Shown: positions 31,463-31,563 of the stretch, in pieces
How the letters are laid out: each line of letters starts with the position of its first letter
How positions within the stretch are numbered: position 1 is the stretch's first letter
From: Octopus bimaculoides
Lineage: Eukaryota
Direction: 5' to 3'
Assembly (NCBI RefSeq): GCF_001194135.2
Contig: NC_069001.1
Location: 35,120,344 to 35,157,832 of the forward strand
DNA length: 37,489 nt
Translations under genes and position numbers: made by a program
Notes under the pieces: model-generated
The model's database searches: none
What the model was told of the DNA's origin: nothing
What the model saw: only the letters and a program-made list of their open reading frames with translations

Positions 31463-31563
31463 CCTAATGTATTTCTTTTCTTTTTCTCTTTTCCAGGTAA
31501 GTGCAAACCATATCTTAAAGTTTTGATTTTAACCTGGGCAGTAATTAATAAATCCAGGTAAGT
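31463..31563 (+). other. Candidate recursive splice site (ratchet point) with 61-nt RS-exon
   Basis: Branch-point CTAAT (31464-31468), a 23-nt pure pyrimidine tract, AG at 31495-31496 immediately followed by GTAAGT, and a second donor CAG|GTAAGT at 31558. Confidence 0.6.

What the first reader, a model, noticed from the sequence alone, without database searches (positions are those of the whole stretch)
31463..31563. Textbook recursive-splicing site with RS-exon, possibly the only trace of a host gene
Seen: CTAAT branch point 28 nt upstream, tttcttttctttttctcttttcc pyrimidine tract, AG|GTAAGT (31496/31497), then 61 nt ending in CAG|GTAAGT (31557/31558). The 61-nt segment has stops in two frames and its length is not a multiple of 3. 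It is not part of any repeat recognised here. Established: fly and vertebrate recursive splice sites are AG|GT junctions followed by a short cryptic exon with its own donor (Sibley et al. 2015; Joseph et al. 2018), typically in very long neural-gene introns. Inference: the window is inside a long + strand intron processed recursively. I am not aware of this being described in cephalopods.
Basis: partly seen in the sequence, partly recalled or inferred. Interest (0 to 1): 0.7.

Follow-up and report, generated by a model that had tools for sequence, protein, structure and literature searches.

The report
Probable recursive splice site, octopus intron
A perfect back-to-back splice acceptor and donor, followed by a 61-base cryptic exon, sits in repeat-rich non-coding DNA; one public cDNA library holds RNA spliced onto exactly that point, so it is probably a stepping-stone ("recursive") splice site in a long intron, a mechanism I found no report of in molluscs.

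Summary
CTAAT, a 23/23 pyrimidine tract, CAG|GTAAGT (31496/31497) and a second CAG|GTAAGT 61 nt on (31557/31558) are all present. These are the only two AGGTAAGT on either strand of the 37.5-kb window, and the site is single copy in DNA runs.

- **Against:** three raw RNA-seq runs (about 36 M records) and every indexed RNA run of the species show nothing at the site.
- **For:** one run of unknown type, X12, proved to be a template-switch cDNA library. One of its contigs carries the template-switch oligo (TSO) tail in front of 31883-32190, which also shows plus-strand RNA. Another X12 contig reads GGCCACCACGGATAGAGCT+CAG|GTAAGT... and runs colinear to 31681, with no X12 cover of the 70 nt upstream. 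This is the predicted intermediate: a foreign, exon-like sequence that is absent from the window, joined at the only canonical AG, regenerating a 9/9 U1 donor.

Not shown are re-splicing at 31497, a saw-tooth profile, lariats, the host gene and deep conservation. A poison or cryptic 61-nt exon without re-splicing remains a serious rival. I file it as a new member of a known kind, of moderate interest.

The parts
31464..31468 (+). Candidate branch point CTAAT (yUnAy; branch A at 31467, 29 nt before the acceptor G)
   Evidence: Sequence. No AG lies between it and the acceptor. Use as a branch point is inferred, not tested.
31472..31494 (+). Polypyrimidine tract, 23 of 23 pyrimidines
   Evidence: 21/21 Y in the scored window; all-Y 21-mers are 0.05% of + strand positions.
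31495..31496 (+). Splice acceptor AG; ratchet-point junction 31496|31497
   Evidence: The X12 cDNA contig diverges from the genome at 31493/31494, with CAG shared. The only canonical AG in that interval is 31495-31496. DNA runs are colinear across it.
31497..31504 (+). Ratchet-point donor GTAAGTGC; with the upstream exon's terminal CAG it regenerates CAG|GTAAGT (9 of 9 core positions complementary to the U1 5' end)
   Evidence: Sequence and the CAG at the contig junction. Its use as a donor is inferred.
31497..31557 (+). 61-nt cryptic RS-exon: length not a multiple of 3, and a stop within 1-10 codons in both frames that are open in the 22 nt of joined upstream sequence
   Evidence: (translations). 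Its words are absent from all indexed RNA runs of the species and from raw RNA reads.
31555..31565 (+). RS-exon donor CAG|GTAAGTAT, complementary to U1 positions 1-11 (11 of 11)
   Evidence: Sequence; the U1 5' end sequence is from my own knowledge. It is unspliced in the X12 contig.
31494..31681 (+). Stretch covered by the X12 junction contig (207 nt, word depth 6.4): 19 foreign letters, then colinear genome through the second donor into the SINE
31883..32190 (+). Plus-strand RNA downstream of the site: X12 contig (329 nt, depth 30.4) preceded by the TSO tail GGTATCAACGCAGAGTACATGGG
   Evidence: TSO identity from PMC8579666 Table 1. The genome has GTT, not GGG, before 31883, so the GGG is non-templated.
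32238..32247 (+). A10 run, the likely internal oligo-dT priming site for the cDNA above (inferred)
   Evidence: One search lists the run. In one search, X12 shows depth through the bin 32199-32317 and none in 32318-32436.

Best explanation
The site is an intronic recursive splice site (ratchet point) with its cryptic 61-nt RS-exon, inside a plus-strand transcription unit whose exons lie outside the window. Step 1 is shown in one library: the upstream exon, ending ...GGCCACCACGGATAGAGCTCAG, is spliced to the acceptor at 31496/31497. The acceptor is probably recognised by exon definition, using the strong tract and the perfect downstream donor at 31557/8. This removes the first part of the intron. 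Step 2 is inferred: the join recreates CAG|GTAAGT at 31497, and that donor is then spliced to the next acceptor downstream. This removes the 61 nt and the rest of the intron, so nothing of the site remains in mRNA. If the downstream donor wins instead, the 61 nt are included, give a premature stop, and the mRNA is expected to be degraded.
For: The motif fits the ratchet-point definition of PMC8605326: juxtaposed acceptor and donor, a cryptic exon of about 50 nt with its own donor, out of frame. It is single copy and colinear in DNA runs. X12 is RNA-derived and the local RNA is plus strand, because a TSO tail precedes 31883-32190. An X12 contig joins 19 foreign letters (58% G+C, against about 31% locally), absent from the window at up to 3 mismatches, to CAG|GTAAGT. 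It continues unspliced past the second donor, and X12 has zero cover of 31423-31493. That is what the intermediate should look like. The foreign tail is neither the TSO nor any adaptor I know, and there is no GGG at the joint. No RNA run holds the 61-nt segment, which fits its removal. In a close relative (organism E) no difference is listed in 31461-31517 or 31547-31583, while 10 are listed elsewhere in 31448-31660.
Against: Support comes from one contig in one library of undeclared type. At depth 6.4 it could descend from a single amplified cDNA molecule. An ordinary cassette exon awaiting its downstream acceptor would give the same intermediate, so the recursive second step is not demonstrated. 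The downstream donor pairs with U1 over 11 positions against 9, so donor competition (PMC8605326) might favour inclusion. Three raw RNA-seq runs have zero reads here or on the unique flanks. The host gene, the upstream exon's position and the intron length are unknown; the exon could even sit in an assembly gap, for example 28124-28466. X12 is not among the listed holders of the 9.3 kb upstream. Nothing with >=80% likeness was found in organisms B, C and D, and the conservation in organism E is not significant (P about 0.05-0.1).
Confidence: 0.55

Rival explanations
1. It is a cryptic or poison cassette exon without recursion. The acceptor at 31497 is used, the 61-nt exon is then spliced out through its own donor at 31557/8 and is included in a minor, frame-shifted isoform that nonsense-mediated decay removes. 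The GTAAGT at its start is never used as a donor, for example because it is repressed after junction-complex deposition as described for mammals.
For: The X12 intermediate fits this equally well. The second donor is the better U1 match (11 of 11). Length 61 and the stops in both usable frames are what a poison exon looks like. Absence from RNA runs fits decay or rarity.
Against: An exon that starts with a perfect CAG|GTAAGT after joining, behind a 23-nt all-pyrimidine tract, is the defining signature of ratchet points. In flies the ratchet donor is used by default at cryptic RS-exons (PMC8605326). No included form is seen in X12 or any other run.
Confidence: 0.25
2. The acceptor opens a longer alternative terminal or retained exon (31497 to beyond 31681, perhaps to about 32238) of a non-productive or non-coding isoform. 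Both GTAAGT motifs are incidental.
For: The contig runs unspliced through the second donor. Plus-strand RNA at higher depth lies 400-700 nt downstream and stops near an A10 run. The library is oligo-dT/template-switch type, which favours 3' ends.
Against: X12 has no cover over 31760-31882. There is no AATAAA in the 40 nt before the A10 run, so internal priming is more likely than a real poly(A) site. No poly(A)-type RNA run holds any of the sampled words of 31440-31640. Two perfect CAGGTAAGT 61 nt apart are not expected by chance.
Confidence: 0.08
3. It is a chance motif. The X12 contig is a chimera (reverse-transcriptase template jump at the CAG microhomology, or a PCR chimera) or a structural variant private to that animal.
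For: There is one contig in one run, possibly from one molecule. Three nucleotides of shared CAG could be read as microhomology. All other RNA data are empty. Low-complexity DNA makes pyrimidine tracts common here.
Against: The breakpoint falls on the one canonical acceptor that was predicted beforehand from sequence, within a 188-nt contig. X12 lacks the upstream 70 nt, which an insertion variant would still have. At least eight DNA samples carry the reference arrangement. There is no GGG at the joint, as TSO-type switching would leave.
Confidence: 0.07

Closest known systems
Drosophila intronic ratchet points with cryptic RS-exons (Hatton 1998; Burnette 2005; Duff 2015; Joseph 2018, as summarised in PMC8605326)
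   Same: It has the pyrimidine tract-CAG|GTAAGT motif, a short cryptic exon (about 50 nt in flies, 61 nt here) with its own strong donor, and out-of-frame content. It lies in non-coding sequence far from the joined exon, and an intermediate joins the upstream exon to the ratchet point.
   Different: It is in a different phylum. The host gene and intron length are unknown. No saw-tooth, no lariat and no deep conservation are shown. Here the RS-exon donor is at least as strong as the ratchet donor, whereas in flies the ratchet donor usually wins.
Vertebrate recursive splice sites and RS-exons (Sibley 2015; Blazquez 2018; Boehm 2018, as cited in PMC8605326)
   Same: The RS-exon would introduce a premature stop if included. 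There is competition between a reconstituted and a downstream 5' splice site. The setting is a genome with long introns.
   Different: Vertebrate cases were defined in introns of more than 100 kb in neural genes, using total RNA-seq and iCLIP-type data. None of that is available here.
Poison (NMD-targeting) cassette exons
   Same: It is short and frame-shifting, carries stops, and is invisible in steady-state mRNA.
   Different: Poison exons do not need a donor at their first nucleotide, and they are usually highly conserved regulatory elements. Inclusion has not been observed here.

Membership tests
Intronic recursive splice site (ratchet point) | Juxtaposed acceptor and donor: pyrimidine tract, AG|GTAAGT | tested here: met
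   23-nt all-Y tract, CAG|GTAAGT at 31496/31497, far above chance for the window.
Intronic recursive splice site (ratchet point) | Short cryptic RS-exon with its own downstream donor (about 50 nt in flies, PMC8605326) | tested here: met
   CAG|GTAAGTAT 61 nt downstream.
Intronic recursive splice site (ratchet point) | RS-exon non-coding or out of frame | tested here: met
   61 nt, with stops within 1-10 codons in both frames open in the joined upstream sequence.
Intronic recursive splice site (ratchet point) | Splicing intermediate: upstream exon joined to the ratchet point | tested here: met
   (junction contig in X12), showing that X12 is template-switch cDNA. This is a single library and a single contig.
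Intronic recursive splice site (ratchet point) | Second step: the regenerated donor is used, so the RS-exon is absent from mRNA that joins the flanking exons; lariat 5' end at the ratchet point | tested here: inconclusive
   The 61-nt segment is absent from all RNA runs. The host mRNA is unidentified, so skipping cannot be told apart from non-expression. No lariat data are available.
Intronic recursive splice site (ratchet point) | Lies in a long intron of an expressed gene | tested here: inconclusive
   Plus-strand RNA is shown. The joined 19-mer is absent from the 31.5 kb upstream, but about 1.8 kb of that stretch is N. There are no Pfam or Rfam hits in the window. The host gene was not found.
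Intronic recursive splice site (ratchet point) | Saw-tooth read density in total or nascent RNA-seq | not testable with these tools
   No total or nascent RNA run was offered. Logan contig depth is flat per contig. X12 has zero cover at 31423-31493 against 6.4 from 31494, which is only suggestive.
Intronic recursive splice site (ratchet point) | Strong conservation of the acceptor|donor motif against poorly conserved surroundings | tested here: inconclusive
   the organism E orthologue has 15 differences in 259 nt, none listed in the motifs (P about 0.05-0.1; differences inside 31476-31489 could be masked by other contigs). Organisms B, C and D have nothing with >=80% likeness.
Poison or cassette exon | Inclusion of the exon between flanking exons in some mature transcripts | tested here: not met
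   no run holds the segment in spliced form. The test is weak because decay and tissue choice could hide it.

The most novel reading that the evidence does not exclude
This is the first molecularly supported recursive splice site in a lophotrochozoan. If so, stepwise removal of long introns through ratchet points with cryptic RS-exons is either ancestral to bilaterians or arose again alongside intron expansion in cephalopods, and many more such sites await detection in cephalopod neural genes.
Probability: 0.5. Interest if true: 0.6.

Novelty: new member of a known kind. Interest (0 to 1): 0.5.

Why it matters
According to PMC8605326, recursive splicing has been worked out in flies (more than 500 ratchet points) and in a handful of vertebrate long introns. 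Full-text searches found no paper linking it to octopus, coleoids, squid or molluscs. Cephalopods combine very large genomes, long introns and large nervous systems, so they are a natural place to ask whether long-intron handling by ratchet points is a general bilaterian solution. This site gives a concrete, testable example. It has a known junction sequence for primer design, and two equally strong competing donors, which makes it a good natural substrate for the donor-competition model. The mechanism itself would not surprise a splicing specialist.

Tried and rejected
- **Local duplication.** The flanks of the two donors are unrelated, so this is rejected.
- **Repeat or transposon origin.** The site is single copy and colinear in DNA runs, so this is rejected.
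- **X12 as Hi-C, RAD or ATAC data with a ligation or adaptor junction.** There is no GATC or other site at the joint, and a TSO tail on a neighbouring contig shows the library is cDNA, so this is rejected.
- **The 19-nt tail as an adaptor or TSO.** It does not match the TSO, so this is rejected.
- **Lariat branch read instead of an exon junction.** This is unlikely, because it needs a branch at G and a chance CAG match. It would in any case support donor use at 31497.
- **Searching for the upstream exon in the window.** There are no matches with up to 3 mismatches.
- **Searching for exons or a host gene.** ORFs of 70 aa or more are low-complexity or transposon-like, Pfam gave 0 hits for 9 ORFs, Rfam gave 0, and the look-up of encoding contigs gave nothing for 2 ORFs.
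- **Raw RNA-seq runs X24, X44 and X45, and the X47 contigs.** Zero reads at the site.
- **Orthologues in organisms B, C and D.** Only low-complexity matches that stop before the motif.
- **Plus-strand evidence 9 kb upstream.** The stretch is almost all repeats, so the result is uninformative.
- **First simulation.** It timed out and was redone.

Full report
**1. What is in the sequence**

- CTAAT lies at 31464-31468.
- An uninterrupted 23-nt pyrimidine run lies at 31472-31494, with no AG between the putative branch A (31467) and the acceptor.
- CAG|GTAAGT sits at 31496/31497.
- After 61 nt there is a second CAG|GTAAGT at 31557/31558.

These are the only two AGGTAAGT (and CAGGTAAGT) on either strand of the 37,489-base window. 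A first-order composition model expects 0.15 CAGGTAAGT per strand. The first motif has 21/21 pyrimidines upstream, a property of 0.05% of plus-strand 21-mers.

In 5000 Markov-simulated windows, AGGTAAGT behind >=18/21 pyrimidines appeared in 0.04% of windows, and never with a second donor 30-100 nt downstream. Real low-complexity DNA makes such tracts 10-50 times commoner than the model does: 0.4-2% of 21-mers have >=19 Y. So relaxed look-alikes are expected a few times in a Gb-sized genome. The exact arrangement is expected about once or less. The motif is striking but is not proof by itself.

The two donors share only TCCAGGTAAGT and their flanks are unrelated, so this is not a tandem duplication. 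From my own knowledge of the U1 5' end (AUACUUACCUG), the first donor pairs at 9 core positions (CAG|GTAAGT, then GC). The second, CAG|GTAAGTAT, pairs at all 11.

**2. Context**

The window is an AT-rich, gap-ridden scaffold (12 N runs, 2334 N). It is full of microsatellites and transposon debris. A high-copy SINE-like element starts about 31650.
- No ORF of 70 aa or more looks like a cellular exon.
- Nine non-trivial ORFs gave no Pfam hit.
- Rfam found nothing.

The site is single copy. DNA runs X1, X2 and X6 each lay exactly one contig, colinear and without differences, over 31423-31652 at depths 12.5, 8.9 and 44.9. The organism is coded (organism A).

**3. RNA evidence: the negative part**

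No indexed RNA run of organism A holds any of the 13 sampled 31-mers of 31440-31640. The 0.06 shares seen for 31300-31700 come from the SINE.

Three raw RNA-seq runs of 2026 (X24, X44, X45; about 12 million records each, roughly 6% of each run) place zero reads on 31423-31645, as does the contig set X47. Their depth on the unique flanks (29819-30413, 31842-31960, 32318-32436) is also zero or close to zero (at most 0.15). Virtually all laid reads belong to repeats, with 97% running on into unlike sequence.

So the 61 nt are not an ordinary, constitutively included exon of an appreciably expressed gene. Standard RNA-seq sees no transcription here.

**4. RNA evidence: the positive part**

One run, X12 (type not declared, 2022, organism A), holds 0.69 of the site's words. 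Its type can be read from its own contigs.

A 329-nt contig (depth 30.4) consists of 23 letters, GGTATCAACGCAGAGTACATGGG, followed by 31883->32190 in plus orientation. Those 23 letters are the 3' part of the SMART/10x template-switch oligo AAGCAGTGGTATCAACGCAGAGTACATrGrG+G (PMC8579666, Table 1).
- The genome has GTT, not GGG, before 31883. The GGG is therefore non-templated, which is classic template switching at an RNA 5' end or reverse-transcriptase stop.
- Hence X12 is a cDNA library, and the RNA at 31883-32190 is plus-strand.
- An A10 run at 32238-32247 is a plausible internal oligo-dT priming site. This is inference.
- DNA runs are colinear and single copy there, apart from a 35-nt repeat.

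The second relevant X12 contig (207 nt, depth 6.4) matches 31494-31681 exactly. It carries, before 31494, the 19 letters GGCCACCACGGATAGAGCT, where the genome has the pyrimidine tract.
- X12 has no contig at all on 31423-31493.
- The tail is not the TSO, contains no GGG at the joint, and occurs nowhere in the window on either strand with up to 3 mismatches.
- The shared letters CAG allow the joint to lie anywhere from 31493|31494 to 31496|31497. The only canonical acceptor in that interval is AG|G at 31496|31497.
- Read that way, the RNA is ...GGCCACCACGGATAGAGCTCAG|GTAAGTGCAAACC.... That is an upstream exon ending in the consensus CAG, joined to the predicted acceptor and regenerating CAG|GTAAGT.
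- It continues unspliced through the second donor into the downstream intron.

A random chimera landing on this one position within a 188-nt contig is improbable, of order 1 in 60-200 even given a chimera. An insertion variant would leave the upstream 70 nt covered. At least eight DNA samples carry the reference arrangement. I put the probability that the acceptor is used in vivo at about 0.9.

**5. What remains unshown**

The contig is equally what a conventional cassette exon would look like while its downstream intron is still unspliced. Recursion proper, meaning use of the regenerated donor at 31497, is inferred from three things:
- the perfect donor;
- the ratchet-point architecture;
- the absence of the 61 nt from every RNA run.

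The joined 22 nt are open in two frames. In both, the 61-nt segment gives a stop within 1-10 codons (ATTDRAQVSANHILKF*, PPRIELR*). The segment cannot be a coding cassette exon. It is either a skipped RS-exon or a poison exon.

By the donor-competition rule established in flies (PMC8605326), the slightly stronger downstream donor could favour inclusion, which is why the poison-exon rival keeps 0.25.

Other open points:
- **Host gene and intron length.** Both are unknown. The upstream exon is more than 31 kb away unless it hides in an assembly gap (about 1.8 kb of N upstream, for example 28124-28466 and 21119-21958).
- **Upstream cover in X12.** X12 is not among the listed holders of the 9.3 kb upstream. 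A stretch 9 kb upstream proved to be almost all repeats and was uninformative.

**6. Conservation**

A contig of organism E (X19, depth 5) is orthologous over 31402-31660, with 15 differences in 259 nt and no gaps.
- The 10 listed differences lie at 31448, 31460, 31518, 31520, 31546, 31584, 31585, 31588, 31615 and 31622.
- None is listed in the branch point, the tract, either CAGGTAAGT or their immediate surroundings.
- Three fall inside the RS-exon.

This is the pattern expected for a ratchet point: motif kept, exon body drifting (PMC8605326). But at about 5% divergence the chance of no hit in the roughly 49 functional positions is 0.05-0.1. Differences within 31476-31489 could also be masked by unrelated low-complexity contigs. 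Organisms B, C and D have nothing of >=80% likeness beyond the tract. Conservation is therefore inconclusive.

**7. Comparison with what is known**

The features that define Drosophila intronic ratchet points (PMC8605326, summarising Hatton 1998, Duff 2015, Joseph 2018 and Pai 2018) fall into three groups here.

| Status | Features |
|---|---|
| Met | Juxtaposed acceptor|donor motif; cryptic RS-exon of about 50 nt with its own donor; out-of-frame content; a splicing intermediate onto the ratchet point |
| Undecided | Long-intron location; motif conservation; the second step |
| Untestable with these tools | Saw-tooth profile; lariats |

So the site works like a ratchet point and passes every membership test that could be completed. 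The decisive test, re-splicing, is open.

**8. Novelty and score**

Full-text searches found no paper combining recursive splicing with octopus or coleoid. The only papers combining it with cephalopod, mollusc or squid are unrelated. About 1.7 million PMC articles and all subscription-only papers were not searched.

If confirmed, this would be a new member of a known kind in a new phylum. That is useful and testable, but it is mechanistically expected for a genome with long introns. My scores are interest 0.5, confidence 0.55 in the recursive-splice-site reading, and about 0.9 that the acceptor is really used.

Noticed in passing
window 31650-31757 (and 32913-33215): High-copy SINE-like elements (gtcatttgactgtggccatgctggagcaccgcc...) with hundreds-fold depth in RNA runs. 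Several positions have majority A>G or T>C differences from this copy (for example 31667, 31716). This could be family consensus or RNA editing; the two were not separated.
   Followed up: no
window 31968-32006: A roughly 35-nt element embedded in otherwise single-copy DNA has depth 10,000-35,000 in DNA runs (background 14-55). It also draws a few RNA reads. Its identity is unknown.
   Followed up: no
window 31547-31552: A canonical AATAAA hexamer lies inside the 61-nt segment, 5 nt before the second perfect U1 site. This may be chance in AT-rich DNA, or relevant to U1 suppression of premature polyadenylation.
   Followed up: no
window 32180-32249, minus strand: A weaker splice-like arrangement on the opposite strand: T10-rich tract, AG, 35 nt, then TCT|GTAAGT (32185 down to 32180). 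It shows that lower-grade look-alikes occur by chance here. The same A10/T10 run is my proposed internal priming site for the plus-strand cDNA.
   Followed up: partly
window 27351-27606: A 27-nt tandem repeat (AGAGAGAGATATGGGAGGAAAAGAGAG), 9.4 copies at 93% identity, inside a 640-nt purine-rich block with strong GC and AT skew.
   Followed up: no
window 8057-8308 (+) and 24688-25264 (both strands): ORFs that resemble retrotransposon fragments (for example ...FGFVPGKSTTDAIF..., reverse-transcriptase-like from my own knowledge). They gave no Pfam hit at E<=0.01.
   Followed up: partly
run X12, contig on window 31883-32190: Library oligo sequence (the template-switch oligo) survives in Logan contigs of a run whose type is not declared. 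It can be used to type such runs and to read the strand of the RNA. Run X61 (also type '?') holds 0.42 of the words of 21960-31255 and was not examined.
   Followed up: partly
The 4.2 kb downstream end of the window, where a next exon could lie, has no read evidence either way.
   Followed up: no
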